Below are positions 5,467 to 62,568 of a DNA stretch of 64,000 nt, one piece after another; the first letter of the stretch is position 1; each line of letters opens with the position of its first letter. The stretch is from IMG/VR virus record IMGVR_UViG_3300032242_000723, positions 269,116 to 333,115 of that record; one strand, given 5' to 3'. The notes beneath the pieces were generated by a model, which saw nothing but the letters and a program-made list of their open reading frames with translations, was not told the origin of the DNA and ran no database searches. The translations under genes were made by a program, and so were the position numbers.

Positions 5467-6024
5467 ATGAGTACCACACCACTATATAATCAACAAGTTA
5501 TCAACATTGGTGCACAGCCAAATGATGGCGTGGGCGATCCGTTACGTGTAGCGTTTGAGAAAGTAAACAATAACTTCTCTAATCTATTTGCTACCTTTGT
5601 TAACTCTACTATTGCTTATACATTTGGAAACACTGCTGGTCAGGTTATCTTTGAATATCCAGCAAACGCTTTCTCTGAGGGTCAGTTCTATATTCAATCA
5701 AGTGATACTGGAACACCAGACAGACAAAATATTCAACTTTTTGCACAGATTAATCCAGCACATGATACTATCAAGTTCAGTGGTTATGGTTCTACCTTCT
5801 TTGGTAACTGTACTTCTCGCTATAATATGGATGTTGTTGGTGGCAATGTAAGAATATTGGCCAACCCATTGATTGACGATGATATGACTCACTTTATCTC
5901 TTCGCAGATCATGTGGACAGGCCCAAATGTACCAGGTATGTATATCTCTCCCGATGGATATGCTAACTCATCTATCGCTACCGAAACAGTGGTCAACATC
6001 ACAACAGAGCAACCTGCACCATGA
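5467..6024 (+). CDS. virion/baseplate structural protein (T4 gp9/gp10-like N-terminus)
   Basis: QQVINIGAQPNDGVGDPLRVAFEKVNNNF N-terminal motif; TAAATA late promoter at 5438. Confidence 0.65.
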   Translation: MSTTPLYNQQVINIGAQPNDGVGDPLRVAFEKVNNNFSNLFATFVNSTIAYTFGNTAGQVIFEYPANAFSEGQFYIQSSDTGTPDRQNIQLFAQINPAHDTIKFSGYGSTFFGNCTSRYNMDVVGGNVRILANPLIDDDMTHFISSQIMWTGPNVPGMYISPDGYANSSIATETVVNITTEQPAP

Positions 6025-6440
6025 GAGCTTGGGAATTTCTAACAGAAGCACAACTTCATCCAGAAGAAGCATCGTTGCCTACAAAGCCAACCGACAAGTT
6101 ACTTCCTGATCAGGCCGGCGCATTGCCCGCTACTTATATCATTCCTGAACTACCTAACCAAGATCCATATCTACAATATCGTTTCGGAGTAGCATTAGCA
6201 GGCGCTAAAGGTAGAAAACAACGAGAACAAGATGGTGTTTCTAGTATGGATCGCACGAGTGCATTCGGTGAAGCAGAGATCATTGTATCGTACGGTGATG
6301 ATGTCGGACCATTTATTGACGATGCTCTTAAGCAAATGGGCATGAGTGGAAAGAAGATGGTAAGCACTCCTACGAGTATAGAAACTTCTGATGTTACTAA
6401 AGTTAGCCCAATGAGACCGTTTAAAGGATATGCAAGATGA
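6021..6440 (+). CDS. hypothetical protein, candidate internal head protein
   Basis: N-terminus MRAWEFLTE resembles the T4 capsid-targeting sequence. Confidence 0.6.
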   Translation: MRAWEFLTEAQLHPEEASLPTKPTDKLLPDQAGALPATYIIPELPNQDPYLQYRFGVALAGAKGRKQREQDGVSSMDRTSAFGEAEIIVSYGDDVGPFIDDALKQMGMSGKKMVSTPTSIETSDVTKVSPMRPFKGYAR

Positions 6441-6817
6441 GAGCACATGAGTTTATTAGTGAAGGTACTGGTGTTCCACCTGAATCCCATACTCACGCCC
6501 ACAGCGGCGGTTATAAGTTTATGGATAACGGAACAGACAGAACTTACAACTTGAATCGCATCATGGCCGCAGCAGGGCAATCTGACGGTAAATCAACGAA
6601 AGCAATAAAAGACTTCGATGATGAAAGTTTTGCTGGTAAACATAACATGGCTTATCCTTATACTGAGATTGAACACAACATGCTGAAGCAAGCATTCAAT
6701 ACTGTTTCTCCTAGCGATGTTCATCGTATTCCTGGCGACAAAAGTAGTGCTGAGCATCCATCTACACATAAAGTAAGTCCGGTTGCTAAACGACCTACTG
6801 ATCACAGAAAAAAATAA
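6437..6817 (+). CDS. hypothetical protein, candidate internal head protein
   Basis: N-terminus MRAHEFISE; coupled to the previous gene. Confidence 0.6.
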   Translation: MRAHEFISEGTGVPPESHTHAHSGGYKFMDNGTDRTYNLNRIMAAAGQSDGKSTKAIKDFDDESFAGKHNMAYPYTEIEHNMLKQAFNTVSPSDVHRIPGDKSSAEHPSTHKVSPVAKRPTDHRKK

Positions 6818-6834
6818 TCACAAGCCTGTTGCTA

Positions 6835-6842
6835 TATAAATA
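6835..6842 (+). promoter_or_regulatory. T4-type late promoter TATAAATA, 5 nt before ATG 6848
   Basis: TATAAATA-ttatc-ATG. Confidence 0.75.
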
Positions 6843-6847
6843 TTATC

Positions 6848-7543
6848 ATGAGCAACATTGACATCAACCAAACACTAGACCTAATCAAACTCAAGTTCTA
6901 CAACGAATATCTGTACACCGCCCACCTGTACGATGAAGGCGACAGTCCATTTCATAAAGAACTAACAGCACAAGTCGTAAAGACTTATGTAGACCCACTC
7001 AATCTTCCAAAAGATGCACATATTCTTGATCTTGGATGCGGCCCTGGCTACTTCTTAGACGAGATGAAGGAACGCGAGTACACTAACACTGTTGGTGTCA
7101 CACTCAGTCCAGGTGATATCAAGATTTGTGAAGACAAGGGACATGTGATCAAGAAGTATGATCTATCATTTCTTCCACAGAAGGATGGCTACTACGATGA
7201 GTCAGTAGACTTTATCTTCTTGCGTCATGCACTTGAGCATAGTCCGTATCCTATCTTCTCATTGATGGAATATAATCGTATCCTCAAGCAGGGATCAAAG
7301 ATTTACATTGAAGTTCCAGCCCCAGACTGTGAACGACAACATGAATCTAACCTGAATCACTATTCTATCTTAGGTTCTAATCAGTTGGGAGCACTATTAC
7401 AACGCTGTGGATTCAACATTGATGCGTTTAACAACTTAGAGTTTGATCTTCATATTCCAACCGAAGATGGTGAAACTAAGAAGGTTACTGAAAAGTATTA
7501 TTGCATAGTTGCCACGAAGGCTAAACCACTAGATGTAAAGTAA
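6848..7543 (+). CDS. class I SAM-dependent methyltransferase
   Basis: ILDLGCGPG motif I, DFIFLRHALEH, ILKQGSKIYIEVP. Confidence 0.88.
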   Translation: MSNIDINQTLDLIKLKFYNEYLYTAHLYDEGDSPFHKELTAQVVKTYVDPLNLPKDAHILDLGCGPGYFLDEMKEREYTNTVGVTLSPGDIKICEDKGHVIKKYDLSFLPQKDGYYDESVDFIFLRHALEHSPYPIFSLMEYNRILKQGSKIYIEVPAPDCERQHESNLNHYSILGSNQLGALLQRCGFNIDAFNNLEFDLHIPTEDGETKKVTEKYYCIVATKAKPLDVK

Positions 7544-7560
7544 GTTTTAAATATCGAGCA

Positions 7561-7600
7561 TAAATACTCTCACAACAGATACTTGTGAGAGTATTTTTTT
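7561..7600 (+). terminator. 14-bp perfect hairpin plus T-tract, overlapping a TAAATA late promoter
   Basis: aaatactctcacaa(7562-75)-cagatac-ttgtgagagtattt(7583-96) followed by Ts; TAAATA at 7561-66. Confidence 0.7.
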
Positions 7601-7612
7601 AAGGAAAAACCT

Positions 7613-7981
7613 ATGAAACCTAGTGAGATTCTGCGTAGTCTAGCAGATATGATTGACGCAAGACAACAAGCAATCAAGCCTTTAGGAGCAAGCGGCGCAT
7701 TGAATCCTAGATTGATGCCGCAAGTTATAGCAGAACCAGTAGATGTTGAGTTTGAGCCTGCGAATGGTCTTGCTCAACAACCTGATGATGTGTTTGTTCC
7801 TCCATTGCAGTTGAAGATTGAACTTCTCAAGAAATCACAGGGTGTGGAAAACATCTATGATGATCCTGAAGAGGAAGAAGATGAAGCCCATCATTATGAT
7901 GAGTTGGCTGCGATCAAGCGTAATGCAGGAATCGCCCCTATCGTGTTAGACGCATTAGACGACGACGAACCACTAGGATAA
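7613..7981 (+). CDS. hypothetical acidic protein
   Basis: 122-aa ORF with AAGGA RBS. Confidence 0.7.
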   Translation: MKPSEILRSLADMIDARQQAIKPLGASGALNPRLMPQVIAEPVDVEFEPANGLAQQPDDVFVPPLQLKIELLKKSQGVENIYDDPEEEEDEAHHYDELAAIKRNAGIAPIVLDALDDDEPLG

Positions 7982-7987
7982 CAAATT

Positions 7988-10549: not shown

Positions 10550-10550
10550 C

Positions 10551-10820: not shown

Positions 10821-10823
10821 ATA
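10818..10823 (+). promoter_or_regulatory. late promoter TAAATA, 5 nt before the terL ATG
   Basis: TAAATA-ctatc-ATG(10829), no SD. Confidence 0.7.
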
Positions 10824-33902: not shown

Positions 33903-34148
33903 ATGCAAAAGAAAACAAAAAGTCTCCTTGAGGAGTTGCAGTCGTACGGTGAGAATCGTGACATTAATCATGTCATTGAATCGCGGGCGTCCAACATCAT
34001 CACAAGTGCTATCAACCTGATAGAACTGATGCAACGTAACTATTCTCCTGAGAAGGCTGAACTTCTAGAGAAGAAGTTGCTTAGTGCAATCAAAGGCAAA
34101 GATCAAGCAAGATTTTCTAAAAGTTTGAGGAAGAAAAATGAAGATTAA
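33903..34148 (+). CDS. hypothetical late protein
   Basis: TAAATA upstream, AGGA RBS. Confidence 0.65.
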   Translation: MQKKTKSLLEELQSYGENRDINHVIESRASNIITSAINLIELMQRNYSPEKAELLEKKLLSAIKGKDQARFSKSLRKKNED

Positions 34149-35160
34149 TGAGTTTGGTAATAAGCAGCAAGTTGAAGAGGGATTAGGCGACGGCCTACAA
34201 AGCATAGGCAATGCAGTCATCGGAAAAAATGCTACTTCTGCTATCAAAGGAATGTTCACTGGAAATCAAGAACAAGGTGTAGAAGATGCCTTTGTAAGAA
34301 ACTTTTTGACAAGTGTTACTCCTAGATTAAAACAAGCAATTTCTACTGGTTTAGTCTCTCTTCCAGCCGCCTCTGCCGCACCTGACCTGACCAACAGAAC
34401 GGCTGATGGAGCCCCACCTACGCCAGAACCAGCAGCAGCACCAAATACAACATCCTCTAATTCTAGAAAAGATGCAGCAGGAAACGTACCATATGATGAT
34501 TTAGCTGAAACTGCATATAGCAAATATGCTAAACTCAATGCGATCTTTGAAAGCATCATGTCTGAAGAAGAGGTAGTCGGTGGTTCTGAAAGTATTTCTC
34601 AATTTTTAGAGGACTGGTTTACTAAGTACATGCAAGGATACAACTGGCAATCAAGAAAACCTGTATTTGATGCAATATTTAAAGAAGTAGAATCAACATA
34701 TAGCAAGACAGGCGGAAAAGAAGCACTTAAAAAACTAGCAAAGGCCGCTTTTGCAATCACAGGCGGAGCAACTCCTTCAAAGATCAATGCAACTCCTAAT
34801 GATACGACGAAAAGTAATACAATACAGAATCAGCAGCCAACCCAAAATAATCAAGGCGTAGGGCAAGGTAGAGGGCAAGGCGCCGGTCAAAGTGTAGGTG
34901 GACAGGCACCAATGAGCGCATCATTCGTACAAGCACATTTGGATGCGTTGAAACAATCTGACCCTAAAGGGTATGCTGCTATTGTGAGCAAGATTATTAA
35001 AGAATATAAGAAAACATTTGCTGCAAGAAATTCTAAGAAGGCGGCGGCACCTACTCCTCCTCCAGTTCCAGCGGCAGCACCAGCGGCCGGCCCCGTCACT
35101 AAGACTGAACCGCCGGTTAAGATAGCAGAATCAAGACTTAGACGTTACCCAAAACTATAA
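34138..35160 (+). CDS. hypothetical protein, candidate internal head protein
   Basis: MKINEF..VEEG N-terminus, A/P/Q low-complexity linkers. Confidence 0.65.
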   Translation: MKINEFGNKQQVEEGLGDGLQSIGNAVIGKNATSAIKGMFTGNQEQGVEDAFVRNFLTSVTPRLKQAISTGLVSLPAASAAPDLTNRTADGAPPTPEPAAAPNTTSSNSRKDAAGNVPYDDLAETAYSKYAKLNAIFESIMSEEEVVGGSESISQFLEDWFTKYMQGYNWQSRKPVFDAIFKEVESTYSKTGGKEALKKLAKAAFAITGGATPSKINATPNDTTKSNTIQNQQPTQNNQGVGQGRGQGAGQSVGGQAPMSASFVQAHLDALKQSDPKGYAAIVSKIIKEYKKTFAARNSKKAAAPTPPPVPAAAPAAGPVTKTEPPVKIAESRLRRYPKL

Positions 35161-36694: not shown

Positions 36695-37393
36695 ATGAAA
36701 CTAAATGATTTTGACAAGAAGAACGTCGCAGCTAAGGCTCTGAGAGAGTCATTCGCTATGAATTTTGATGTAACTAACCTAGATCGTCCTAAGACTCGGG
36801 CAATGCTCACTAAAGTCAATGGATTAATCAATGAATCAAAAAGATCACCTGACTTTCATAAGGCTCAGAACAATCCAACTTACATGAAGTTAAAGTTTAT
36901 GGAGCAAGTTCTAGCACAACATTTGCGTATCGCAAAGACTCCTCGCATCGTGTTTGAAAATGAAGAAGTAGAAAAGTCACAAGTCATTCTTGCTGCACAA
37001 GATATGGTTGATTCTATTCAGAAGTATTACGAAGATGTAAACGACATGCTCGTTAAAGAACTTCCTGCTCTTGTTGATTCAATTCAATCAGAGATCGGTG
37101 CTAACGAGAGTCAAGCATACGAGCAACAAGCTGGCGAAACATTAACTGCACTCAACACCGCCCTTCAAGAAGCAAAGACCAAAATGACAGCGGCATTAGG
37201 CGGGTTGACTGGTCAGGGTGGAATGGATGCATTCGGCGGACCTCCTGAAATGGGTGGCGAAGATGATTTGGGTGGCATGGGTTCCGAAGATGATTTGGGT
37301 GGCATGGATGACATGGGCGGCGAAGAGCTTCCTCCGATGCCTGAAGAAGAGCCTGATATGGGTTTAGGTAGCGTCGGTCGCGCAAAGAGATAA
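36695..37393 (+). CDS. helical late protein, candidate scaffold/internal head protein
   Basis: TAAATA 36662; coiled coils; G/M/D-rich tail with gaagatgatttgggtggcatgg repeated at 37259 and 37286. Confidence 0.6.
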   Translation: MKLNDFDKKNVAAKALRESFAMNFDVTNLDRPKTRAMLTKVNGLINESKRSPDFHKAQNNPTYMKLKFMEQVLAQHLRIAKTPRIVFENEEVEKSQVILAAQDMVDSIQKYYEDVNDMLVKELPALVDSIQSEIGANESQAYEQQAGETLTALNTALQEAKTKMTAALGGLTGQGGMDAFGGPPEMGGEDDLGGMGSEDDLGGMDDMGGEELPPMPEEEPDMGLGSVGRAKR

Positions 37394-37395: not shown

Positions 37396-37728
37396 ATGCG
37401 TCTCTTTGAATTTGATCAGGAAAAAGCTCAGGTAACTCAGATCGTTGCTTTAATAAATCAGTTAAAGCAGGATATTGAGGATGGAGACATCGATCCTCAA
37501 GATTATACCGTTGACGAGCTACTTGACTATTTTCAAATGTATGACATCATATTAGATGTAAACGATCTATACAACATGATTAAAGTGCCTCCGCTTAAGG
37601 ACCTTATCAAAAACATTCAAGGTGATAAGGTATTATTTGTTGGTCAAGGCGAAGAAGACGCCCTCGACGCACCAGAAGATGAGCAAGAAAAAGTCGTTGC
37701 TAAGATGGCTAAATCTGCAATGAAGTAA
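37396..37728 (+). CDS. hypothetical acidic protein
   Basis: MRLFEFDQE N-terminus; 110 aa. Confidence 0.65.
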   Translation: MRLFEFDQEKAQVTQIVALINQLKQDIEDGDIDPQDYTVDELLDYFQMYDIILDVNDLYNMIKVPPLKDLIKNIQGDKVLFVGQGEEDALDAPEDEQEKVVAKMAKSAMK

Positions 37729-51961: not shown

Positions 51962-54900
51962 ATGGCACTAGTATCACCGGGCGTAGAAGTAACGATCATT
52001 GATCAATCTCAGTATCTTCCAGCACCGCTCAATTCAATTCCTTTAATTCTGCTTGCAACAGCACAGAATAAGGCAGATCCAACTTCTACTGCTGTAGCAG
52101 CAGGCACAACAGCCGCAAATGCCGGTAAGCTCTTTCAAATTACTAGTCAACGCGATCTTGTTTCACTCTACGGTAATCCATTCTTCTATACTACTTCAAA
52201 CGGAACTCCTATTCAGGGTTATGAACTCAATGAATATGGTCTTCTTGCTGCTTACTCAGCACTTGGTGTTTCAAATCGCGTATATTGCTTAAGAGCGGAT
52301 ATCGATCTTGCTGCACTTGTTGGTCAAACAGGCCGCCCAACTGGTAATCCTGCTGACGGTACTTGGTGGTTGAATACAACTACCACAACTTGGGGTATCT
52401 ATGAATTTAACCAAGTAACTGGTCAGTTTGAGATCGTAACTCCAATCGTGATCACTGACTCTGCTATGATCTCGGCTGGTTTCCCACTTGCTAGCATCGG
52501 CTCGATTGGTGATTATGCAATCAACGCTATTCCAACTTACTCCTATGCAAGTTCGCCGTCTGCACATACATATTTCTACAAGACTCCAACTAACACATGG
52601 GTAGCAGTAGGTAGTGCAGGTTGGATGAAATCTTACCCAACAATTCAGGGTACAGCATCAAACCCAGACCTTACTCCAGGTGACACACTAACCATTACTA
52701 TTAACAATGGTAGTGCAGTGACAGTAACTGTTGCAGCAGGTCCAAACGATGTTGTTTCTGTTCTTGCAGCATCAATTAACGCATTGAATAACACGTATCT
52801 TAGTGCAAGTGTTGTCGGTGGAAAGCTTCAAATCTTCTCATCACAAACAGGTTGGAATTATACATTAGCAACTCCACCTGGTATTGCAATTTCAGGTACT
52901 GGAACTCTTCTTGCTGATTTAGGTATCACATCAGGTACATATTATCAGCCTACATTGGCATATGGTACTTCTGCTGAACAGCCACTATGGCAAACAGGTC
53001 AAACATATCCTAGACCAACTGGTTCAGTATGGATCAAGGTCGGCGCTGCTGGCACTGGACTAGACACTTCAATATCTCAGTGGAATAGCTTGAATGCGAC
53101 TTGGAGTCCAAAAACTGCAAGTTATGCGATTACTGACTGGAACGCAATTGCAGCACTTGATGCAACAGGTGGTAAGGCAATTCCAGCAGGTTCAGTTTAT
53201 ACTCAATATGGTTACGACTACAGTGGATCAACTACTCCTGCTCCCCTCTATTATTGGGAAAGAATCGCACAAGGTGCAACCATCATAACTGGCACTAATA
53301 TTGCACCGTCTTTCACTAATGGTCCATATAATTCTACAGTTCTAGTATCTATTCCTGGATCAGAAGGCTTAAGTTCAGCCTATCCAATAACTCTTGCCGA
53401 TAACACTAATGCAACTGACTTTGTAACAGCTTGGTCAGCAGCAGGTATCCCCTTCACTTCTGCTACTGTACTAGATACTGGTGCAATTCAGATTACTCAT
53501 AATGAGGGCGGAGTTATCATCATCAATGATATTAGTTCTTCAACTGGATTTAGTAATGGACTAAGCGCCGATGCAGGCTTTGTTGTAGGAACAACTCAAG
53601 GTGTCAAAGAAGGTCTATTCAGTACTACGGTATTTCAACCTACTGCAACATCAACTAGTGGCGTAGGCAGCGGCCTTCGAATTAATGTAACAAACTATTA
53701 TCAAAATTACTTTTTGTTGAATGCTTCTTTTGTAGCAGCAGGATCTGGTTATGTTGTAGGCGACACTGTTACTTTTGCCGGAGCTAATTTAGGCGGAAGT
53801 ACTCCTGCTAATAACCTAGTTGTTAGAGTCAACTCAGTCGGCGATAGCGGCGCAGTAACCGGTATTGGATACGTTTCAGGATCCGGTGCTGCTGCTTATA
53901 CTACTCAATTGTCAAACTGGCAAGAGTTCTCTATGACTGCTAACGAAGGTGCACCAGTCAATATTCCCGACGACATGACCGATTGGTTCTATAGCGTCGT
54001 TGACGAAGTAGACATCATGGTCAACACCACTAGTGGTTGGAAGGGTTATAAAAATGTAGCTTACGGAACAACTGGTTTCCCACTTCCATCAGGCGTGAAT
54101 GCAACTGATCCTAATGGTCCAATCGTAAGTGCATCTGAGCCTACTACTCAATCTGATGGTACTGCACTTGTTGCAGGCGATATCTGGATTTCTACTGCTG
54201 ATTTGGAAAACTATCCGATCATCAGTCGTTGGCAGTTGGTAGGAACAAAGTATAAGTGGGTATTGATTGACAATGCTGACCAAACTAGCTCAAACGGCGT
54301 TCTCTTCGCGGATGCTCGTTGGGCAACTAACGGCACAACAAATCCAGCTAATGATCCGATTCCGTCAATCAAAAGCTTGCTAACTAGCAACTATCTTGAT
54401 CTAGATGCGCCGGGTCACACTCTTTACCCAGTTGGTATGCTATTGTTCAACACAAGACGTACAGGATACAATATCAAGCAGTTCCGTGTAAATTACTTTA
54501 ACAATGATCGTTTCCCTGACACAACTGCCCCTGCTGAAACTGATGCATGGGTCTCGGTATCAGGACTTCAAGCAAATGGTTCACCTTACATGGGTCGTAA
54601 GGCCCAACGTAATATGGTTGTTAAAGCATTACGAGCAACTATTGATACTAATGCTGCTATCCGTGACGAAGATAATGGGTTTAACTTGATCGCAACACCT
54701 AATTATCCTGAATTACAACCTAATATGATTGTACTCAACAACGATAGAGGAGACACTGGGTTCATCATCGGTGATACACCAATGAGACTTCCAGATGACG
54801 CAACAGCAATTCAAGCATGGGCAACTAATGCTGCTGGTGCTGAAACTACTGGTGAAGCGGGTCTTGTGTCAAGAGACACTTATATGGGTCTGTTCTATCC

Positions 54901-55534
54901 AAGTGGTATTACTTCAGACTTGAATGGTAATCTTGTTGCTGTTCCTCCTTCGCATATGATGATCAGAACATTCTTGCGTAATGATACAGTTGCTTATCCT
55001 TGGTTCGCTCCTGCAGGTACTCGTAGAGGTCTTATCGACAATGCAACTAGCATTGGTTATATCGATAGTGTCACTGGTGAATTCCAAGTCATCAAGACAA
55101 ATATCGGCATTCGTGATGTTCTTTACTCGAATCAGATTAATCCGCTTGTATTCTTCACTGGTAACGGATTGCTCAACTACGGCAACAAGACAAGCTATAA
55201 CTCATCGTCGGCACTTGACAGAGTTAACGTAGCAAGACTAGTCGCGTATGTTCGTCGTCAATTGACGCTTGCAGCAAGACCGTTTGTATTCGAACCAAAC
55301 GATGCATTAACAAGACAACAAATTTCTGGTGTTATCCAAACATTGTTTGTTGATCTCGTAGCAAAGCGTGGCGTATACGACTACTCAGTAGTATGCGATG
55401 ATTCGAATAACACTCCAGCAAGAATCGATAGAAATGAACTTTGGATCGATGTTGCACTCGAACCCGTTAAGGCGGTGGAATTCATTTATATCCCAGTTCG
55501 TATCTTAAACACTGGCGAACTAAAGAACAAGTAA
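51962..55534 (+). CDS. tail sheath protein (T4 gp18-like) with large insertion domains
   Basis: LVSPGVEV N-terminus; YPWFAPAGTRRG, NQINP, RVNVARL, FVFEPND, PVKAVEFI. Confidence 0.93.
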   Translation: MALVSPGVEVTIIDQSQYLPAPLNSIPLILLATAQNKADPTSTAVAAGTTAANAGKLFQITSQRDLVSLYGNPFFYTTSNGTPIQGYELNEYGLLAAYSALGVSNRVYCLRADIDLAALVGQTGRPTGNPADGTWWLNTTTTTWGIYEFNQVTGQFEIVTPIVITDSAMISAGFPLASIGSIGDYAINAIPTYSYASSPSAHTYFYKTPTNTWVAVGSAGWMKSYPTIQGTASNPDLTPGDTLTITINNGSAVTVTVAAGPNDVVSVLAASINALNNTYLSASVVGGKLQIFSSQTGWNYTLATPPGIAISGTGTLLADLGITSGTYYQPTLAYGTSAEQPLWQTGQTYPRPTGSVWIKVGAAGTGLDTSISQWNSLNATWSPKTASYAITDWNAIAALDATGGKAIPAGSVYTQYGYDYSGSTTPAPLYYWERIAQGATIITGTNIAPSFTNGPYNSTVLVSIPGSEGLSSAYPITLADNTNATDFVTAWSAAGIPFTSATVLDTGAIQITHNEGGVIIINDISSSTGFSNGLSADAGFVVGTTQGVKEGLFSTTVFQPTATSTSGVGSGLRINVTNYYQNYFLLNASFVAAGSGYVVGDTVTFAGANLGGSTPANNLVVRVNSVGDSGAVTGIGYVSGSGAAAYTTQLSNWQEFSMTANEGAPVNIPDDMTDWFYSVVDEVDIMVNTTSGWKGYKNVAYGTTGFPLPSGVNATDPNGPIVSASEPTTQSDGTALVAGDIWISTADLENYPIISRWQLVGTKYKWVLIDNADQTSSNGVLFADARWATNGTTNPANDPIPSIKSLLTSNYLDLDAPGHTLYPVGMLLFNTRRTGYNIKQFRVNYFNNDRFPDTTAPAETDAWVSVSGLQANGSPYMGRKAQRNMVVKALRATIDTNAAIRDEDNGFNLIATPNYPELQPNMIVLNNDRGDTGFIIGDTPMRLPDDATAIQAWATNAAGAETTGEAGLVSRDTYMGLFYPSGITSDLNGNLVAVPPSHMMIRTFLRNDTVAYPWFAPAGTRRGLIDNATSIGYIDSVTGEFQVIKTNIGIRDVLYSNQINPLVFFTGNGLLNYGNKTSYNSSSALDRVNVARLVAYVRRQLTLAARPFVFEPNDALTRQQISGVIQTLFVDLVAKRGVYDYSVVCDDSNNTPARIDRNELWIDVALEPVKAVEFIYIPVRILNTGELKNK

Positions 55535-57458: not shown

Positions 57459-57476
57459 TCTAAGATAAATAGTATC

Positions 57477-57833
57477 ATGGCAACTTCACAATACAATTCA
57501 GTAGACCAAACCGTAGCTATCTTTGATGGCTTTTACAACCTTAATCTCAACGTAAGTGCTACAGAATATGATGTAGTATATTCATACTTCAAAGGTGTGT
57601 CAGAAAATACCACTATTGCAGGAAACTTTACCGTAGTTCTGTTCAGAATTGCAAATGACGGTAACTATAATGTACTAGATTTACTAGCAATCATTAAAGG
57701 GCAATCCAACAAACTACAAATGAATAAAGTTCTTTGCTATTATCTGAACACCTTTAAGGCAAAAGCGTCATTATACGGTGTCAGTAACGTACCTAAACCA
57801 AATCAAGTAGTACAACGTAACGTAGTGCTATAA
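57477..57833 (+). CDS. hypothetical late protein
   Basis: TAAATA-gtatc-ATG. Confidence 0.7.
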   Translation: MATSQYNSVDQTVAIFDGFYNLNLNVSATEYDVVYSYFKGVSENTTIAGNFTVVLFRIANDGNYNVLDLLAIIKGQSNKLQMNKVLCYYLNTFKAKASLYGVSNVPKPNQVVQRNVVL

Positions 57834-57834
57834 A

Positions 57835-58269
57835 ATGGGTAAATGGGCACAAGGTTTCTACACCCCAAAGAATGCAGAAAAGTATATTGGTAAACGCACT
57901 CCTAGATATCGTTCTGGTTGGGAACTTACTTTCATGAACTTTTGTGATAACAATGACAATGTATTATATTGGGCCAGTGAATCTATGGTTGTTCCCTATC
58001 AGCATCCCTTTACCGGCAAACCAACTAACTATATCCCTGATTTCTTTGTAGTATACGAGAATAAGTCTGGCAAAAAGATTGCTGAAGTTGTTGAAATCAA
58101 ACCAAAGAAGCAAAGTCTAATAGAAAGTAGAGTTGCAACCGCAAAAGATAGAATGGTTGTAGCAATCAATCATGCTAAGTGGCGTGCAGCCACTGTATAT
58201 TGCAAAGCCCATGGTTTCGCCTTTCGCGTAATTACGGAAGATGACTTGTTCTACAATGGACGCAAGTAA
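57835..58269 (+). CDS. head completion nuclease (T4 gp4-like, TnsA-type fold)
   Basis: YRSGWELTFMNFCD, WASE, YIPDF, VEIKP, NHAKW. Confidence 0.85.
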   Translation: MGKWAQGFYTPKNAEKYIGKRTPRYRSGWELTFMNFCDNNDNVLYWASESMVVPYQHPFTGKPTNYIPDFFVVYENKSGKKIAEVVEIKPKKQSLIESRVATAKDRMVVAINHAKWRAATVYCKAHGFAFRVITEDDLFYNGRK

Positions 58270-58283
58270 AACTAAATACTTCT

Positions 58284-58769
58284 ATGAGCAAAAAATTAGA
58301 AGAACTTTTCGATATGGAATCCAGTGTGACAAACGATCTCACTATTCCATTGCCTAACTTTGAACAAGATGTAACAGAGACGGCACTTACAACACTAGAC
58401 AAGATTGAAGCAGCCTTACCACAAGTCAGGGGATTAGAAGCCGCTGACAATGAGATGGACGAACTTGCTATGCTTGCAACCAATAGTTACAAGGACCTAA
58501 TGGATCTTGGGCTGCAGGTTGAAGCACGATTCAGTTCTGAAATATTCAACTCAGCCAGTAGTATGCTTGGTCATGCTATCACTGCAAAGACAGCTAAGCT
58601 AAACGCCAAATTAAAGCGAATTGATATGCAGTTAAAAAAAGCACAACTAGATATGAAACTTGCTTCTAAAAGCGAAGAGATAGAGGCAATACAGATTGGC
58701 GAAGGCCAATCATTGGATCGCAATGAGTTACTTAAGATATTGATGAATAAAAATAATACAGATCAATGA
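58284..58769 (+). CDS. putative terminase small subunit
   Basis: All-helical 161 aa; DLMDLG..EIFNSASSML..KRIDMQLKK resembles the TerS pattern recalled for T4-like marine phages; TAAATA-cttct-ATG. Confidence 0.4.
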   Translation: MSKKLEELFDMESSVTNDLTIPLPNFEQDVTETALTTLDKIEAALPQVRGLEAADNEMDELAMLATNSYKDLMDLGLQVEARFSSEIFNSASSMLGHAITAKTAKLNAKLKRIDMQLKKAQLDMKLASKSEEIEAIQIGEGQSLDRNELLKILMNKNNTDQ

Positions 58770-58837
58770 TAAATAAAGATGTAGTTCACGAGACTGGCAT
58801 CTCCAACTACTCTAATGCTATAGAAGGAAACATCAGC

Positions 58838-59608
58838 ATGTGTATTTATTGTGGTACAAACAAGTACCGTAGAATCTATGAAAATCATTATGGTCCTATT
58901 CCAAAAGAAGAGAATGGTCGGGCATACGAAATACATCATATAGACAATAATCATTCAAACAATGTCCCGATAAACTTGAAATGCGTGAGTTTGCAAGAAC
59001 ATTATGACATTCATTATGCTCAAGGAGATTGGGGCGCCTGTTACAGAATGGCTAAAAGAATGTCTCTAGCTCCAAATGAGATTGCAGAGATAACTCGCCA
59101 AAATAATAAAAAAATGATAGAAGCAGGAACTCATCCCTTTATCGGTCCTAGCTTGAATAAAAGCAGACATGCAGCAGGAACTCATCCTTTGCAAAATCCA
59201 AAAAATATAGCAGCAGCTAAAGAAAGAGAACGAGTCCTCCTAACTGCTGGCACCCATCTGTTTTTAGATAAGCAATGGCAATCTGACAAGTGTAAAAAAG
59301 CAGTCATTAATGGAAACCATAACTTTTTAGGCGGTGAGATACAGAGACGAACTAGTACCCGTCGCAGTCAAGAAGGAACACATAATCTTTTACGAGATAA
59401 TGATCCTCGAATACAAGATAAATCACATCACTTTTTCGGCGGGGCCATACAACGAGCTTCTAATTTAAAAAGGTTGTCTGAGGGCACTCATCCTTCACAG
59501 AGAAAGATAACATGCGAACATTGTGAAAAATTAGTTAGCGTAGGTATGCACCAGCGATGGCACGGAAACAATTGTAAAAATAAAACAACAAAGATAAATA
59601 CTCAATAA
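58838..59608 (+). CDS. HNH homing endonuclease with GxH(P/N/L)(F/L) repeats
   Basis: YEIHHIDNNHSNNVPINLKCVSLQEHYDIH; repeats GTHPF/GTHPL/GTHLF/GNHNF/GTHNL; CEHC..HQRWHGNNC; ATG 58838 after AAGGA. Confidence 0.88.
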   Translation: MCIYCGTNKYRRIYENHYGPIPKEENGRAYEIHHIDNNHSNNVPINLKCVSLQEHYDIHYAQGDWGACYRMAKRMSLAPNEIAEITRQNNKKMIEAGTHPFIGPSLNKSRHAAGTHPLQNPKNIAAAKERERVLLTAGTHLFLDKQWQSDKCKKAVINGNHNFLGGEIQRRTSTRRSQEGTHNLLRDNDPRIQDKSHHFFGGAIQRASNLKRLSEGTHPSQRKITCEHCEKLVSVGMHQRWHGNNCKNKTTKINTQ

Positions 59609-59627
59609 TACATTAGAGGTCACCTTA

Positions 59628-60251
59628 ATGAAAAATCTAAGACACTATATTTCTGAGTCTGTACATACATACGATTACACGATCAAAATCGCTGGCGAAG
59701 TGGATAAGAACTTCCTAGACCTCTTTACCTATAACTTGAACAAGTTTGATCCTGTTGAGATTTCAGATCCAAAATCGCTTCCAATCCAAAAAGACCCATA
59801 TGGGTTCCCAAATCTTTCTAACGAGCCAGTGACGATCATCAAGGCGAAGTTTAGATATCCTACAAATGAGCCTATGATCCAGCAAATCGCTCAGCTCCTT
59901 GGATACAACATCAACATGGTTCGGGTTGTCAAGACATCGTATGATGACAGCATCAATACCGAAATGGACGAGTATGCTAATCAAATGAAGCACAGTCCAG
60001 TGTTGAATCACGAAGAGATGGAAGAAGAATCAGGTGCTAAGGCAGCAGCAAAAGCATATGGTGACTCATATCTATCTAGCATCAAAGATCAAGCAAAGGA
60101 TTCTAAGATTGATATTCCTTATGCTGGTAAGAAGACTCCAGACGCATTCGATCCATTCAAGCCGCAAGAGTACGCTAAATCAGACGGCAAAGACAGCCCA
60201 ATGAGCAAAATCACAAGACCTGCAAAGCCACAAACTGGTTCAAGAGGGTAA
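59628..60251 (+). CDS. putative head-associated protein
   Basis: MKNLRHYISE N-terminus, TAAATA upstream, GAGG RBS. Confidence 0.6.
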   Translation: MKNLRHYISESVHTYDYTIKIAGEVDKNFLDLFTYNLNKFDPVEISDPKSLPIQKDPYGFPNLSNEPVTIIKAKFRYPTNEPMIQQIAQLLGYNINMVRVVKTSYDDSINTEMDEYANQMKHSPVLNHEEMEEESGAKAAAKAYGDSYLSSIKDQAKDSKIDIPYAGKKTPDAFDPFKPQEYAKSDGKDSPMSKITRPAKPQTGSRG

Positions 60252-60264
60252 AAAGGAAATCAAC

Positions 60265-62568
60265 ATGAGCATGAAAAATCTACTAGAAAAAATGACCCAA
60301 TTGAGCAAAATCAATGAGACTCCTAAGCCACCTAAGAAGAAGGTTCTCAAAGAGTCAGCACAAGTTGCTCCTGCAAAACCTGCTTCATTGCGTGAGTTGT
60401 TCAATCAACTTGACGAAGCAATGGCACCAGGCCAGAAGCCACTTCCTGTTCTTGATCCACAAAACAAGCAAGCTGGCGCGGGCTTCGTGACAAGCACTAA
60501 CCCCGCTGTACAAAACATGTTGAAGAATCTTGATCCTAAAGATGTACAGATTGCAATGGCACCGGGTAAGCCTGGTCAAGCAATGGCTCCTACAGCAGCA
60601 GGTCATCCTAATCCAAATCAAATGGCTCCTACTGCGGGTGGCACTGGCCAAGCAATGCATGAAGATGAGCTTGATGAAAAATGGTCCGGCGATGCTGAAG
60701 TCAAGTCAACTGGCCAATATGCAGGTAAGTCAGTAGCAGAACTCAAGAGCGCACTTTCAAAGTTAAAGGCATCTGGTCCACATCATGAAGGTACTCCTGA
60801 AAACAAGCGTATGAAGCAACTTATGTTTGCTATTCGTGCTAAGAAGGATTGGAAGGGCGGCATCGAAGAAGGTGATCTACCATCTTCATCTGGTGTTGAC
60901 ACTCGCGGTGCTGGTTTAGGCGCTGGCCGTAGTCAGGCTACCTTTGAAAGTAAGGAAAGCAAAGATCATAAGTTTGAAGTTTGCTATACAACTACCTCTG
61001 ACAAAGAAGTAAAAACCACTATTACTGCTTCAAGTGTTAAAGAAGCAACTGCAAAGATTGAGAAGAAGCACAACTTCAAGTCTCTTGATTCTGTCAAGAA
61101 GGTCAAGGAAGAAAAAAAGGAAGTCAAAGAAGGCACTAAGGGTGTAAATCCTTTTGCTAAGAAAGACGACAAGGCTCCAGCTAAAGCACCAGCTAAAGGT
61201 AAGAAGCCAGACTTCTTAGACCTTGACAAAGACGGTGATAAGAAAGAACCAATGAAGAAGGCAGCAGCCGACAAGAAAAAGAAAACAGTGAAGGAAAGCA
61301 TGAGTCACAGAATGCAAGCGGCCCGCTTAGAGGGCAAAGCACATGGTCTTAAGGGCCACGCTCACAACGGTAAGCACTACGAAGACATGGAAGAAGCTCG
61401 TTGCTATCATGAAGGATACAAAGAAGGCCTTGATGAATGTCACGGTATGATGCCTGGTATGGGTCTTGTTGGTGAAGCTGGTATGCCAGCAACTACTCAT
61501 GGTATGGCATCACAAGCAATGCCTACTATGGAAGACGAGTTCATGGAAGACGAGATGGAAGAGGGCAATGCGTTCACCGCTGCTCTAGCAAAAGCACCAA
61601 AAGGTGGTAAGTTTAAGGTCGGCGGCAATACATTCACTGACACTAGCGGATACGATGCTCAACTTGACGAATATACATTTGAGTCACTTGATAGACAACT
61701 TGATGCATTACTCAACGAAGGCGTTTCAGTTTCTATCTCTAGAGGGCAAGAAAATGTACCTAACTCAGTAACGATCACTGCACAAGACGCAGAAGCCGAT
61801 GAACTACTATCACTTGTACGCAATGCAGGCATGGGCGGTATTTTTGGTGGTGACGAAGGTTCGGACGATTCATTCGGTATGCCTCACCCGCATGAGATGG
61901 GCGGAGCTTCTGAAATCAATGCTCCAGGACAGATTGAAGTCGTAGATGATCATGAAGGTATGCTTGCTCTTATGAAGAAACTATCAGGAGTCCAACCATC
62001 CGGTCCTGCTATTGAGTTTAGCAATGACGAAGAAGGTTCTGATGATTATGAATCTGAAGAAGGTTCTGATGATCACGAATCAGAAGAGTGCTCATCATGC
62101 GGTCACGCCGATTGTGATTGTGACGATGAGCAAGTTGACGAAATGGAAACTGACGAGCAAGAAGAATTTGAAGTTGCAGAAGATACAGGCGCTGATAATA
62201 CCAATGCTGATACTGCAGGACAAGTTGGTACTGATGAGGCATTAGCAAAAGCAGATGCGGGTGAAGATGAAGAAGAAGGTGAAGAAGACGAGTCTATTCA
62301 AGAATGCGGCATGTATGAAGATGACATGGAAGAGGAAGAAGACCTCACTGAATGGGCAAATGACGCAGGCGGAAACGGCACTGAGACTACATTTGAACAA
62401 GACATTGATTTTATGACACGAGTTATCTCGGGTGGATTGAACAAGCAAAAGTCAACTGGTCAAACTACTATCCCAGTTATTCCTGGTCAAAAGGATCGTA
62501 TGGGCTATTCAGCAGTCAACGAATCAATCAGCGACTGGGCTAAGTTAGCAGGTATTAAGAAGAACTAA
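60265..62568 (+). CDS. large acidic/basic modular protein, candidate prohead core/scaffold or internal polyprotein
   Basis: 767 aa with more than 12 (V/I/L/M)xE sites, DFLDLDKDGDKKE motif, D/E-rich tail. Confidence 0.6.
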   Translation: MSMKNLLEKMTQLSKINETPKPPKKKVLKESAQVAPAKPASLRELFNQLDEAMAPGQKPLPVLDPQNKQAGAGFVTSTNPAVQNMLKNLDPKDVQIAMAPGKPGQAMAPTAAGHPNPNQMAPTAGGTGQAMHEDELDEKWSGDAEVKSTGQYAGKSVAELKSALSKLKASGPHHEGTPENKRMKQLMFAIRAKKDWKGGIEEGDLPSSSGVDTRGAGLGAGRSQATFESKESKDHKFEVCYTTTSDKEVKTTITASSVKEATAKIEKKHNFKSLDSVKKVKEEKKEVKEGTKGVNPFAKKDDKAPAKAPAKGKKPDFLDLDKDGDKKEPMKKAAADKKKKTVKESMSHRMQAARLEGKAHGLKGHAHNGKHYEDMEEARCYHEGYKEGLDECHGMMPGMGLVGEAGMPATTHGMASQAMPTMEDEFMEDEMEEGNAFTAALAKAPKGGKFKVGGNTFTDTSGYDAQLDEYTFESLDRQLDALLNEGVSVSISRGQENVPNSVTITAQDAEADELLSLVRNAGMGGIFGGDEGSDDSFGMPHPHEMGGASEINAPGQIEVVDDHEGMLALMKKLSGVQPSGPAIEFSNDEEGSDDYESEEGSDDHESEECSSCGHADCDCDDEQVDEMETDEQEEFEVAEDTGADNTNADTAGQVGTDEALAKADAGEDEEEGEEDESIQECGMYEDDMEEEEDLTEWANDAGGNGTETTFEQDIDFMTRVISGGLNKQKSTGQTTIPVIPGQKDRMGYSAVNESISDWAKLAGIKKN

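What the first reader, a model, noticed from the sequence alone, without database searches (positions are those of the whole stretch)
6021..60300. Family of proteins with T4 capsid-targeting-sequence-like N-termini
Seen: unrelated late ORFs begin MRAWEFLTE (6021), MRAHEFISE (6437), MKINEF..VEE (34138), MKLNDF (36695), MRLFEFDQE (37396), MKNLRHYISE (59628) and MSMKNLLE..INE (60265). Known: the T4 IPIII capsid-targeting sequence is MKTYQEFIAE and is removed by gp21 protease after Glu. Inference: this is a set of otherwise unannotated proteins packaged in the head and injected into the host, which are candidate anti-defence or host-takeover effectors.
Basis: partly seen in the sequence, partly recalled or inferred. 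Interest (0 to 1): 0.65.

Follow-up and report, generated by a model that had tools for sequence, protein, structure and literature searches.

The report
Capsid-targeting leader on many phage proteins
An uncultured 333-kb T4-related jumbo phage puts the same nine-residue N-terminal tag (MRAxEFIxE, very like T4's capsid-targeting sequence) on at least eleven otherwise unrelated proteins, two of them in this window, which most likely marks them for packaging into the head, cleavage by the head protease, and injection into the host.

Summary
The seven N-termini are in the sequence as quoted. Only two of them (6021, 6437) belong to a statistically robust family.

- **The family.** The motif is M-[RK]-x-x-E-[FIL]-[ILF]-x-E at the extreme N-terminus. 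The whole 333-kb genome has 11 such genes, against about 0.09 expected by chance.
- **The cargoes.** They are unrelated: three T7 gp0.7-like kinases, a GNAT protein, a GH19 muramidase protein, an RNA-ligase-like DUF6267 protein, and several unknowns.
- **Relatives.** Five related metagenomic jumbo phages each carry 2 to 9 copies, and reversed-pattern controls gave 0.
- **Modularity.** Codons differ between copies. Cargo domains shuffle behind a fixed leader. Homologues chosen by body similarity carry the leader followed by a variable linker, and the linker often ends in a second [LIV]xE just before the conserved body.
- **Head machinery.** The genome encodes a T4-type portal, S77 (gp21-like) protease, scaffold and gp23 capsid protein.
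- **Match to T4.** The leader's conserved F, I/L and E map onto the T4 positions shown by mutagenesis to drive targeting and processing.
- **The other five candidates.** 59628 fits the T4 10-mer spacing and has a virion-detected homologue in PA5oct. 34138 and 36695 are possible variants. 37396 is weak. 60265 is unsupported.

Packaging and injection are inferred, not shown.

The parts
5436..5443 (+). GATAAATA, a T4-late-promoter-like motif 23 nt upstream of the first gene of the operon 5467-6024 / 6021-6440 / 6437-6817
   Evidence: Sequence read. Genome-wide, 56 of 120 ATAAATA sites lie within 80 nt upstream of a same-strand gene start, many of them structural genes. The function as a late promoter is inferred from T4.
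5467..6024 (+). First gene of the operon (185 aa). Its N-terminus resembles baseplate-wedge / tail-fibre connector proteins. Its stop overlaps the 6021 start (ATGA).
   Evidence: PHROG hits; overlap read.
6021..6047 (+). Leader MRAWEFLTE (9 codons), with a predicted protease cut after Glu9
   Evidence: 26.1 bits. Of 120 homologues, 115 keep the full 9-mer; A3, F6 and E9 are invariant in the alignment.
6021..6440 (+). 139-aa leader-tagged protein: leader, then a variable linker, then a conserved body (KLLPDQ..ALPATY.IPELPNQDPYLQYRFGVA). Function unknown.
   Evidence: 406 metagenomic homologues; alignment A1. No Pfam or PHROG hit. AF2 model poor, pLDDT 54.
6437..6463 (+). Leader MRAHEFISE (9 codons), with a predicted cut after Glu9
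   Evidence: 27.6 bits, the best in the genome.
6437..6817 (+). 126-aa leader-tagged protein, the tandem partner of 6021. The tandem pair is conserved in G001, G002, G004 and G005.
   Evidence: Linked to the 6021 family only through intermediate sequences.
34138..35160 (+). 340-aa ORF, a possible leader variant: MKINEF...QVEE|G. The first six residues fit the leader and a V-x-E site lies at residues 12-14.
   Evidence: Matrix score 3.0 bits, marginal. The N-terminus MKINEF..QV[ED]EGL is conserved in the G004 homologue although the bodies diverge. ATAAATA lies upstream of the preceding overlapping gene.
36695..37393 (+). 232-aa ORF, a possible head protein with a longer propeptide: MKLNDF...AKALRE|S
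   Evidence: Does not fit the 9-mer. MKLx[DE][FL] and an [LF]-x-E at about residues 17-22 are conserved in G001, G002 and G004. PHROG 14154 'virion structural protein', E 1e-10. Own ATAAATA 27 nt upstream.
37396..37728 (+). 110-aa ORF starting MRLFEFDQE, a weak candidate. It has Asp at position 7, so there is no [IL]-x-E.
   Evidence: 7.3 bits, inside the background range. The G004 orthologue reads ..MFLFEFDQD, without Arg2 or Glu9.
59628..60251 (+). 207-aa ORF starting MKNLRHYISE, with the T4-type 10-mer spacing (hydrophobic 4, aromatic 7, I/L 8, E 10). Probable virion protein.
   Evidence: Orthologues read MRSLKQYIME and MKNFKDYLTE. The regex hits only this orthologue group. The PA5oct homologue EST35_0202 is annotated as an ESI-MS/MS-detected structural protein. 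Own ATAAATA 27 nt upstream.
60265..62568 (+). 767-aa ORF starting MSMKNLLEKM. Not a member: no leader match and the N-terminus is not conserved in orthologues.

Best explanation
The nine residues M-[RK]-[A/I]-x-E-[F/I/L]-[I/L]-x-E (consensus MRAxEFIxE) are this phage clade's version of the T4 capsid-targeting sequence (T4: MKTYQEFIAE). I propose four steps.

1. Late in infection, each tagged protein is made with the leader at its extreme N-terminus.
2. The leader docks the protein onto the scaffolding core (gp22-like scaffold plus small core proteins) while the gp23-type shell assembles around it.
3. The S77 gp21-type prohead protease then cuts after the Glu of [I/L]-x-E. In several families it also cuts at a second [LIV]-x-E at the end of a short variable linker. 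This frees the mature cargo inside the head.
4. The cargo leaves with the DNA at the next infection.

In the window the tagged proteins are the tandem small proteins at 6021 and 6437. Elsewhere in the genome they are three gp0.7-like kinases next to the capsid gene, a GNAT-containing protein, a GH19 muramidase protein, an RNA-ligase-like DUF6267 protein, a DUF6934 protein and two unknowns.

What is shown: the tag exists, it is modular, it is under amino-acid-level selection, it ends in the T4 protease motif, and it co-occurs with the T4 head machinery. What is inferred: docking, cleavage, residence in the virion, and ejection.
For: **More than chance.**
- 11 true N-terminal hits against about 0.09 expected.
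- All eight [ED][FILYWM][ILVFM]xE matches within the first 14 residues sit at position 5.
- The DNA pattern gives 2-9 hits in each of five relatives, with 0 in the reversed-pattern controls.
- In IMG/VR, 85 of 94 matches are at ORF starts.

**Amino-acid-level selection.** Arg, Glu, Phe, Ile and Leu use different codons in different copies.

**Modularity.**
- 117 tagged proteins fall into 26 cargo clusters.
- The C-terminal domain of the 650-aa GNAT protein is the whole cargo of 226- and 235-aa tagged proteins in G001 and G004.
- The GH19 and kinase domains appear behind the leader in different architectures.

**Families chosen by body similarity.**
- DUF6267: 61 of 69 homologues start M[KR]xx[ED][FILMYW]. 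Their propeptides run 7-60 aa. 43 of 69 have [LIVMF]xE within 9 aa of the conserved core. Cultured cyanophage homologues start directly at the core, without a leader.
- Kinases: 40 of 59 carry the full leader. All share the junction xE|[ILVM][TS]RP. One homologue starts ME-ITRP, and two start inside the kinase body.

**Head machinery.**
- Portal, S77 protease, scaffold and gp23 are present.
- The protease aligns to T4 gp21 structure 5JBL at E 2e-13.
- All five relatives have the S77 protease.
- The capsid protein N-terminus has L-x-E before the conserved mature start in all relatives.

**Match to T4.**
- ipII and ipIII start MKTYQEFIAE in the T4 record.
- Mutagenesis places targeting at T4 residues 4 and 7, and processing at residues 8 and 10 (PMC9026906).
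- T4 F7, I8 and E10 correspond to the leader's near-invariant F6, I/L7 and E9.
- T-even internal proteins are described as diverse proteins that share only a CTS (PMC3012670).

**Timing.** Six of seven leader loci lie in same-strand gene runs headed by ATAAATA.

**Structure.** In AF2 models the leader is a short, low-confidence helix detached from the fold.
Against: - The phage is uncultured, so there are no virion proteomics, cleavage data or infection data.
- The leader has 9 residues, not 10. T4's Tyr4, a targeting determinant, has no conserved counterpart; the equivalent position is Ala.
- Mature cargoes are not uniformly basic as T4 IPs are (pI 4.8-9.2).
- The 6021 family is strongly conserved, unlike the hypervariable T-even IPs.
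- The late-promoter assignment rests on analogy with T4. The kinase trio has no exact ATAAATA upstream.
- The cultured relatives PA5oct, Atu_ph07, SCTP-2 and RaK2 carry at most one 9-mer each, no more than the controls. No experimentally studied phage therefore carries this exact multi-copy tag.
- The planned leader-protease complex prediction could not be run.
Confidence: 0.7

Rival explanations
1. The tag is a packaging and cleavage leader as described, but the two window proteins (6021, 6437) are structural internal head or ejection components rather than host-directed effectors. Examples would be DNA-associated internal proteins or part of an ejection conduit.
For: - The tandem pair is present in every relative examined and is 60-85% identical over hundreds of homologues.
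- It is the largest cargo cluster, 47 of 117.
- The proteins are small, poorly structured in predictions, and show no enzyme signature.
Against: - The 6021 mature form is acidic (pI 5.4) and the 6437 mature form only mildly basic (pI 8.9), unlike the highly basic T4 IPs.
- Nothing distinguishes a structural role from an effector role computationally.
Confidence: 0.35
2. The leader is a protein-level tag for something other than head packaging. Candidates are an inhibitory propeptide that keeps the enzymes silent until a protease removes it, a degron, or a signal for another assembly or location.
For: - A conserved Glu-ended leader followed by a variable linker also fits a generic cleavable propeptide.
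- Several cargoes are potentially self-harmful enzymes: kinase, muramidase, ligase-like.
- No direct virion evidence exists.
Against: - The only known system with this sequence signature is the T4 CTS, and the full T4 head-core machinery is present.
- S77 proteases act inside proheads, so cleavage by this enzyme implies head residence.
- The kinase trio lies immediately downstream of the capsid gene.
Confidence: 0.15
3. The similarity reflects an mRNA or translation-level element, such as a coupling signal or downstream box, and not a protein signal.
For: Most tagged genes overlap or abut the upstream gene's stop (ATGA, TAATG) and lack a clear Shine-Dalgarno sequence.
Against: - Synonymous codons vary freely while the residues stay fixed.
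- Insertions preserve a new [IL]-[ST]-E, for example MRARDFIKSISE.
- Dialects keep the chemistry, not the bases.
Confidence: 0.03
4. The resemblance is chance, or it is shared ancestry of whole proteins (a paralogue family) rather than a portable tag.
For: - For 36695, 37396 and 60265 taken alone, chance is adequate.
- The half-motif M[KR]xx[ED][FYWLI] without the rest occurs 6 times. My own rough estimate of the chance expectation is 2-4; I did not compute it.
Against: - For the core set, 11 are observed against 0.09 expected.
- There is no similarity beyond about residue 10 between cargo clusters.
- The same domains occur with and without the leader.
Confidence: 0.02

Closest known systems
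[quoted passage not shown]
   Same: - An extreme N-terminal leader of about 10 residues on otherwise unrelated proteins.
- The core E-F-I-x-E ending in the gp21 cleavage motif.
- The conserved F, I/L and E match the T4 positions needed for targeting (7) and processing (8, 10).
- The genome encodes homologues of gp20, gp21, gp22 and gp23.
   Different: - 9 residues rather than 10, and Arg-Ala in place of Lys-Thr-Tyr, so there is no counterpart of T4 Tyr4.
- 11 tagged genes per genome, against 3 exact-type matches in T4 (ipII, ipIII and gene 61.1).
- Cargoes are mostly enzymes of 100-650 aa and mixed charge, not small basic proteins.
- Many propeptides are bipartite: leader, variable linker, then a second cleavage site.
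- Nothing has been shown experimentally.
T4 Alt (ADP-ribosyltransferase packaged in the head, processed by gp21, injected)
   Same: An enzyme cargo that would act on the host immediately after injection. It carries an N-terminal propeptide removed by the prohead protease (PMC5694885, PMC9026906).
   Different: The cargo enzymes here are kinases, a GNAT protein, a ligase-like protein and a muramidase. I found no ART domain. By my recollection, Alt's propeptide sequence differs from the IP-type CTS; I did not check this here.
Propeptide-bearing ejection and inner-body proteins of phiKZ-like giant phages (phiKZ, 201phi2-1, SPN3US)
   Same: Many head-internal proteins are cleaved after Glu by a gp21-related protease, and their propeptides are inferred to target them to the prohead (PMC5694885).
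   Different: Those propeptides are long (often more than 100 aa) and are not a shared short tag. The cleavage motif there is reported as different (e.g. A-L-E). Those phages are a different lineage, without a recognised gp22-type scaffold.
Pseudomonas phage PA5oct (closest cultured relative by head and tail genes)
   Same: - The capsid protein is 66% identical, the protease 56% and the sheath 47%.
- The small protein after the portal starts MKINDIITE and is MS-detected in virions.
- The 59628 homologue is MS-detected.
   Different: Only one or two leader-like N-termini, no multi-copy MRAxEFIxE family. There are no homologues of the 6021 protein in cultured phages.

Membership tests
T4-type capsid-targeting sequence system | A short leader (about 10 aa) at the extreme N-terminus, shared by proteins that are otherwise unrelated | tested here: met
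   11 genes in this genome; 26 cargo clusters among 117 tagged proteins; 6021 and 6437 share only residues 1 to about 17.
T4-type capsid-targeting sequence system | The leader ends in the prohead-protease motif (hydrophobic-x-Glu), with cleavage after Glu | tested here: met
   The motif is present in all 11: L-T-E, I-S-E, I-T-E, L-I-E, I-V-E, L-N-E, L-P-E. An insertion variant regenerates I-S-E. The cleavage itself was not tested.
T4-type capsid-targeting sequence system | The genome encodes a gp21-type (S77) prohead protease with a gp22-type scaffold, gp23 capsid protein and gp20 portal | tested here: met
   PF03420 at 93 bits, PF07068 at 327 bits and PF07230 at 346 bits, all above cut-off. 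The gene order is portal, small core proteins, protease, scaffold, MCP. The protease aligns to 5JBL at E 2e-13. It carries His and Ser where the crystal chain has Ala, which I take to be inactivating mutations in the construct.
T4-type capsid-targeting sequence system | Residues equivalent to the T4 CTS functional positions are conserved (4 and 7 for targeting; 8 and 10 for processing) | tested here: inconclusive
   F6, I/L7 and E9 (equivalent to T4 F7, I8 and E10) are near-invariant. The T4 Tyr4 equivalent is Ala3 or a variable residue. The T4 mapping is from PMC9026906.
T4-type capsid-targeting sequence system | Tagged proteins are present in virions with the leader removed, and the leader is sufficient to package a foreign protein | not testable with these tools
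   The phage is uncultured and known only from metagenomes.
T-even internal proteins (IP-like cargo) | Small, highly basic, fast-evolving proteins | tested here: not met
   Mature pI ranges from 4.8 to 9.2 and sizes from 100 to 650 aa. The 6021 family is 60-85% identical across its homologues.
Peptidase S77 (T4 gp21) | Pfam model above the gathering score, with the catalytic His and Ser in place | tested here: met
Covalent nucleotidyltransferases (RNA/DNA ligases), for the DUF6267 cargo | Motif I KxDG lysine, motifs IV (EG) and V (basic residues), and a ligase adenylyltransferase fold | tested here: met
   K56-W-D58-G59, E346-G347, K358 and R362 are invariant in 41 sequences. The AF2 model has pLDDT 92. 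The top 20 VIA hits are all ligases or capping enzymes at Z 5.8-7.8; this is a middling Z, so the fold call is moderate. Foldseek's top hits are also ligases, at E >= 0.03.
T7 gp0.7-like protein kinases, for the three tandem cargoes | Profile match to the kinase family | tested here: met
   PHROG 15752 at E 6e-15 over residues 20-192. Homologues carry the precomputed family PF27024. Catalytic residues were not examined.

The most novel reading that the evidence does not exclude
A short, sequence-readable N-terminal code would let the set of virion-packaged, injected proteins be read directly from genomes of uncultured T4-superfamily phages. The code comes in several clade-specific 'dialects': MRAxEFIxE, MR[FY]x[ED]FK[LI]VE, MKIxEI..LLE, and T4's MKTYQEFIAE. 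On this reading, these jumbo phages pre-load their heads with a first-strike enzyme kit that acts before any phage gene is expressed: protein kinases, an acetyltransferase, an RNA-ligase-like repair enzyme and a muramidase.
Probability: 0.45. Interest if true: 0.75.

Novelty: new variant of a known kind. Interest (0 to 1): 0.62.

Why it matters
If the tag works as in T4, three things follow.

- It gives a simple sequence rule for predicting which proteins uncultured jumbo phages carry into the cell. That is normally knowable only from virion proteomics of cultured phages.
- It nominates concrete, testable injected enzymes: kinases, a GNAT protein, an RNA-ligase-like DUF6267 protein and a GH19 muramidase. 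These are candidates for host takeover or counter-defence.
- It extends the T4 CTS from the T-evens to a distant, environmentally abundant clade, and it offers new portable packaging tags for phage engineering.

It also gives the first functional hint for Pfam DUF6267, which looks like a ligase-type nucleotidyltransferase.

Tried and rejected
**Searches that found nothing useful**
- Megablast of 10 kb against cultured phages gave no match.
- tblastn of the 6021 protein against cultured phages gave no match.
- Pfam and PHROG scans found nothing for 6021, 6437, 34138 or 37396.
- The AF2 model of the 6021 protein was too poor to search with (pLDDT 54).
- The ESM Atlas gave no usable lead for 6021 or 6437.
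- PDB sequence searches of four cargoes gave nothing.
- The literature search found no paper holding MRA[KRHNTY]EFI strings or DUF6267.

There is no verdict either way.
I resent it in corrected form.

**Ideas rejected**
- My first gene call suggested a leaderless kinase paralogue next to a tagged one. This was a start-codon artefact: all three tandem kinases carry the leader (correcting).
- I tested whether the phage belongs to the bS21-encoding huge-phage clades. No S21 gene was found.
- The 9-mer is not a multi-copy feature of the cultured jumbo relatives or of T4.
- The internal hit at genome position 54127 (FolE-like, 115 codons into its ORF) is a chance match.

- Reads tools were not used, because they would not test packaging.
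- No alternative genetic code was needed.

Full report
**What the window is.** The window is the last 64 kb of a single 333,115-bp IMG/VR virus record (GC 41%, CheckV completeness 92%). It has no nucleotide-level relative among cultured phages. Its 1190-aa tail sheath is 47% identical to that of Pseudomonas jumbo phage PA5oct and 44% to Agrobacterium phage Atu_ph07. The genome carries a T4-type head module on the minus strand at 175-183 kb. The gene order is portal (PF07230, 346 bits), a 77-aa protein, a 283-aa acidic core protein, an S77 gp21-type protease (PF03420, 93 bits), a 365-aa scaffold and a gp23 capsid protein (PF07068, 327 bits). The protease aligns to the T4 gp21 crystal structure 5JBL (E 2e-13) and has His and Ser at the two positions where the crystal chain has Ala. 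The capsid protein is 66% identical to PA5oct's. In all relatives it has an L-x-E site just before the conserved mature N-terminus (..QLLAE|SSAGTTTAGNIATLNRV).

- In the whole genome, exactly eight of the 479 called ORFs have [ED][FILYWM][ILVFM]xE in their first 14 residues. All eight have it at position 5 and all begin M[KR].
- A six-frame scan that does not depend on my gene calls finds 12 ATG-started matches to M[KR]xx[ED][FILMYW][ILVFM]x[ED]. Eleven start within 38 codons of an upstream stop, so they are real N-termini. The twelfth lies 115 codons inside a FolE-like ORF.
- The same pattern at internal positions predicts about 0.09 N-terminal hits per genome.
- A position matrix trained only on leaders from three other genomes separates this genome's N-termini cleanly. 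6437 (27.6 bits) and 6021 (26.1 bits) are the top two. Six further called genes score 12-23 bits. Then there is a gap. 37396 scores 7.3 and 34138 scores 3.0, inside or just above the background from internal Met positions (99.9th percentile 2.9, maximum 8.8). 36695, 59628 and 60265 score below -9.

**The tagged set.** The eleven genes are listed below.

| Position | Length | Cargo |
|---|---|---|
| window 6021 | 139 aa | unknown |
| window 6437 | 126 aa | unknown |
| genome 28780 | 372 aa | Pfam DUF6267 |
| genome 36861 | 422 aa | unknown |
| genome 38126 | 280 aa | DUF6934 |
| genome 43142 | 432 aa | C-terminal GH19 muramidase / endolysin domain |
| genome 44547 | 100 aa | unknown |
| genome 103821 | 650 aa | GNAT acetyltransferase domain plus a C-terminal domain |
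| genome 175903, 175328, 174750 (minus strand) | 191, 192, 187 aa | three tandem T7 gp0.7-like kinases, immediately downstream of the capsid gene |

My first gene call wrongly suggested that one kinase paralogue lacked the leader. The six-frame scan corrected that.

**It is a protein-level, portable tag.**

- The 6021 and 6437 proteins align only over residues 1-17.
- Different copies use different codons for the same residues: AGA/CGT/AAG, GAA/GAG, TTT/TTC, and ATT/ATC/ATA/CTA/CTG/TTA. Selection therefore acts on the peptide, not on an RNA or DNA element.
- Behind the fixed leader the cargo domains shuffle. The C-terminal domain of the 650-aa GNAT protein (residues 436-648) is the entire cargo of tagged proteins of 235 aa in G004 and 226 aa in G001.
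- The GH19 domain sits behind the leader in proteins of 432, 756 and 397 aa with different N-terminal parts.
- One G004 kinase carries an extra C-terminal half.

**Relatives.**

- The 6021 protein has 406 metagenomic homologues. Of the 120 listed, 115 keep the full 9-mer. Their consensus is M-R-A-[KRHYW]-E-F-[IVL]-x-E-[SAG], followed by a length-variable linker and then a well-conserved body.
- Three homologues with a 3-residue insertion (MRARDFIKSISE) regenerate an I-S-E end.
- A degenerate DNA pattern for the leader hits 7, 2, 5, 9 and 3 times in five related records of 230-525 kb. The reversed-pattern control gave zero hits in all five. All five encode an S77 protease.
85 of 94 matches in the fetched loci are at ORF starts.
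- Together with the four whole genomes, this gives 117 tagged proteins in 26 cargo clusters.
- The cultured phages PA5oct, Atu_ph07, SCTP-2 and RaK2 have at most one match each, no more than the controls. T4 has none for the 9-mer. The multi-copy 9-mer is therefore specific to this uncultured clade.

**Two unbiased family tests.** In both tests the homologues were collected by similarity to the protein body, not to the leader.

*DUF6267.*
- Of 69 homologues with a Met start and the conserved core motif, 61 begin M[KR]xx[ED][FILMYW].
- The stretch between the leader and the core varies from 7 to 60 residues.
- 43 have an [LIVMF]-x-E within nine residues of the core. Examples are ..IITE|AVGRDLQH..PLVE|AARIQH and ..LNE|GVGRELQH.
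- The leaders come in recognisable dialects: MRAxEF[IL]xE, MR[FY]x[ED]FK[LI]VE, and MKIxEI..LLE.
- Cultured T4-like cyanophage homologues (S-RSM4_064, P-HM1_161) start directly at the core (MANIKQLKHLEHLEDE), with no leader.

*Kinases.*
- 40 of 59 homologues have the full leader.
- Almost all share the junction x-E|[ILVM]-[TS]-R-P. Examples are VLDE|ITRP, LKE|ITRP and LVE|LTRP.
- One homologue begins ME-ITRP, and two begin inside the kinase body.
- A conserved mature start immediately after a Glu, preceded by a dispensable N-terminal piece of variable length, is what a cleaved propeptide looks like.

**Comparison with T4.**

- In the T4 record, ipII and ipIII begin MKTYQEFIAE.
- The literature states that these ten residues suffice to package foreign proteins, and that gp21 removes them (PMC8442874; PMC5694885).
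- T-even internal proteins are described as a diverse set sharing only the CTS (PMC3012670).
- Mutagenesis places targeting mainly at residues 4 and 7, and processing at residues 8 and 10. Asp at position 10 blocks processing (PMC9026906).
- Aligning on E-F-I-x-E, T4 F7, I8 and E10 correspond to F6, I/L7 and E9 here, which are the most conserved leader positions. T4 Tyr4 has no counterpart.
- The tag is therefore one residue shorter and partly different, but it shares the functionally mapped core.

**Timing.** The T4 late-promoter core (TATAAATA, from my knowledge of T4) has a counterpart here. 56 of 120 ATAAATA sites lie within 80 nt upstream of a same-strand gene start. The genes they precede include the tube, the sheath, a small core protein and several large structural genes. 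GATAAATA at window 5436-5443 heads the operon 5467-6024 / 6021-6440 / 6437-6817, whose genes overlap by ATGA. Six of the seven leader loci lie in same-strand gene runs headed by such a site. The kinase trio does not. The 6021/6437 operon sits among late-type genes: a tail-fibre-connector-like N-terminus upstream, and tail proteins and the large terminase downstream. That these sites are late promoters is an inference.

**The other five candidates.**

- **59628 (MKNLRHYISE).** It misses the 9-mer but has the T4 10-mer spacing, conserved in G001 (MRSLKQYIME) and G002 (MKNFKDYLTE). A regex for that spacing hits only this orthologue group. Its PA5oct homologue, EST35_0202, is annotated as a structural protein detected by ESI-MS/MS. 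It lies in the tail-gene neighbourhood, so it is probably a virion protein, but whether it is targeted to the head is open.
- **34138 (MKINEF..QVEE|G) and 36695 (MKLNDF..ALRE|S).** Both keep the first six leader-like residues and a later hydrophobic-x-Glu in their orthologues. 36695 matches a PHROG of virion structural proteins. They could be variants with a displaced cut site, like some DUF6267 dialects, but the half-motif alone is not statistically distinctive.
- **37396.** It lacks the I/L at position 7, and its G004 orthologue lacks Arg2 and Glu9. It is weak.
- **60265.** It shows no leader and no N-terminal conservation.

**Cargo function.** The DUF6267 cargo has invariant K-W-D-G, E-G, K and R positions in 41 sequences and a confident AF2 model (pLDDT 92; residues 1-14 are below 50). 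Its top 20 structural neighbours are all RNA ligases, DNA ligases or capping enzymes. These include Naegleria RNA ligase (Z 7.8), T. brucei REL1 (7.0), T4 Rnl2 (6.8), Trl1 (6.8) and T4 Rnl1 (6.4). The Z values are middling, but the family is consistent and the motif I lysine is in place. I read it as a ligase-type nucleotidyltransferase. No paper mentions DUF6267. The 6021 and 6437 proteins remain functionally opaque. Mature cargoes span pI 4.8-9.2, so they are not IP-like basic proteins.

**Mechanism and confidence.** That the tag is real, modular and selected is close to certain. My best explanation (0.7) is that it works as a CTS: it docks onto the scaffolding core, the S77 protease cuts after Glu, and the cargo is retained in the head and ejected. 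This rests on the shared head machinery, the shared functional residues and the propeptide architecture, not on any direct observation. Whether the two window proteins are effectors or conserved internal or ejection components is open, and their conservation leans toward the latter. The enzyme cargoes elsewhere fit the first-strike effector idea, by analogy with T4 Alt. A virion-borne muramidase would also fit cell-wall penetration at entry.

**Novelty.** The concept is established for T4, and a review already suggests that T4-like phages use CTSs to load varied proteins. Three things are new: a distinct 9-mer version with clade-specific dialects in an abundant uncultured jumbo-phage clade; its use on about a dozen genes per genome, including kinases, a GNAT protein, a ligase-like enzyme and a muramidase; and the bipartite propeptide pattern. 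I found no paper containing these leader strings.

**Limits.** The phage is uncultured. My gene calls are heuristic, so I used six-frame scans wherever it mattered. The complex prediction could not be run. Reads tools were not used.

Noticed in passing
T4 record NC_000866.4, 18966-19130 (minus strand), locus L283: T4 gene 61.1, a 54-aa hypothetical protein next to the primase gene, begins MKTFKEFIKE. This is the only CTS-type N-terminus in T4 besides ipII and ipIII under the pattern I used. It is not annotated as an internal protein.
   Followed up: partly
genome 28780-29898 (locus L001); model m7d7b9de6c2b7: Pfam DUF6267 looks like a ligase-type covalent nucleotidyltransferase. It has invariant KWDG, EG, K and R motifs, an AF2 model at pLDDT 92, and RNA/DNA ligases as all top structural neighbours (Z 5.8-7.8). 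Homologues occur in T4-like cyanophages, where they are annotated as 'T4-GC 71'. No literature was found.
   Followed up: yes
window 58766-59608; genome 17010-17630, 34288-34911 (-), 39194-39796 (-): There are at least four paralogous ORFs of about 200-280 aa that begin MCIYCGT..YRRIYE.H.GPIPKD, which look like homing endonucleases. Each has an ATAAATA about 60 nt upstream, and they are scattered between structural and leader-tagged genes. One sits directly upstream of 59628.
   Followed up: no
window 57835-58269: A 144-aa ORF with a TnsA-like endonuclease N-terminal domain (PF08722, E 2e-19) sits inside the tail-gene neighbourhood.
   Followed up: no
window 51962-55534: The tail sheath is 1190 aa. 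Only about 57-74% of it aligns to other jumbo-phage sheaths, in two pieces, so it carries a large insertion.
   Followed up: no
window 2675-4664: A nucleotide-sugar epimerase-like gene and an aminotransferase-like gene lie just upstream of the lysis-like and tail-fibre-like genes. This may be a sugar-modification module.
   Followed up: no
PA5oct MK797984.1 82921-83142 (locus L158): The 73-aa protein immediately after the PA5oct portal gene, at the position of T4 gp67, starts MKINDIITE and is annotated as MS-detected in virions. Its counterparts in this clade start MNLNEMFD, MKLMEMFD and MILSEIYN.
   Followed up: partly
Melnitz-2 phage MZ577096.1 12203-13288 (locus L288): The protein upstream of the DUF6267 homologue in this T4-like Methylophilales phage starts MQGFKTFLSEA, which has the T4 10-mer spacing. 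The DUF6267 homologue itself starts MLTLINFSKYITED.
   Followed up: no
G004 133415-136474 (-) and G002 87220-88041: My gene calls give a 1019-aa portal ORF in G004, in which only the first 369 aa align, and a 273-aa C-terminal piece in G002. This suggests an intein or homing-endonuclease insertion, or a split portal gene, in the relatives.
   Followed up: no
SCTP-2 MF360958.1 326749-326775: Salicola phage SCTP-2 has one ORF start encoding MKINELLNE, identical to the leader of the 100-aa tagged protein at genome 44547.
   Followed up: no
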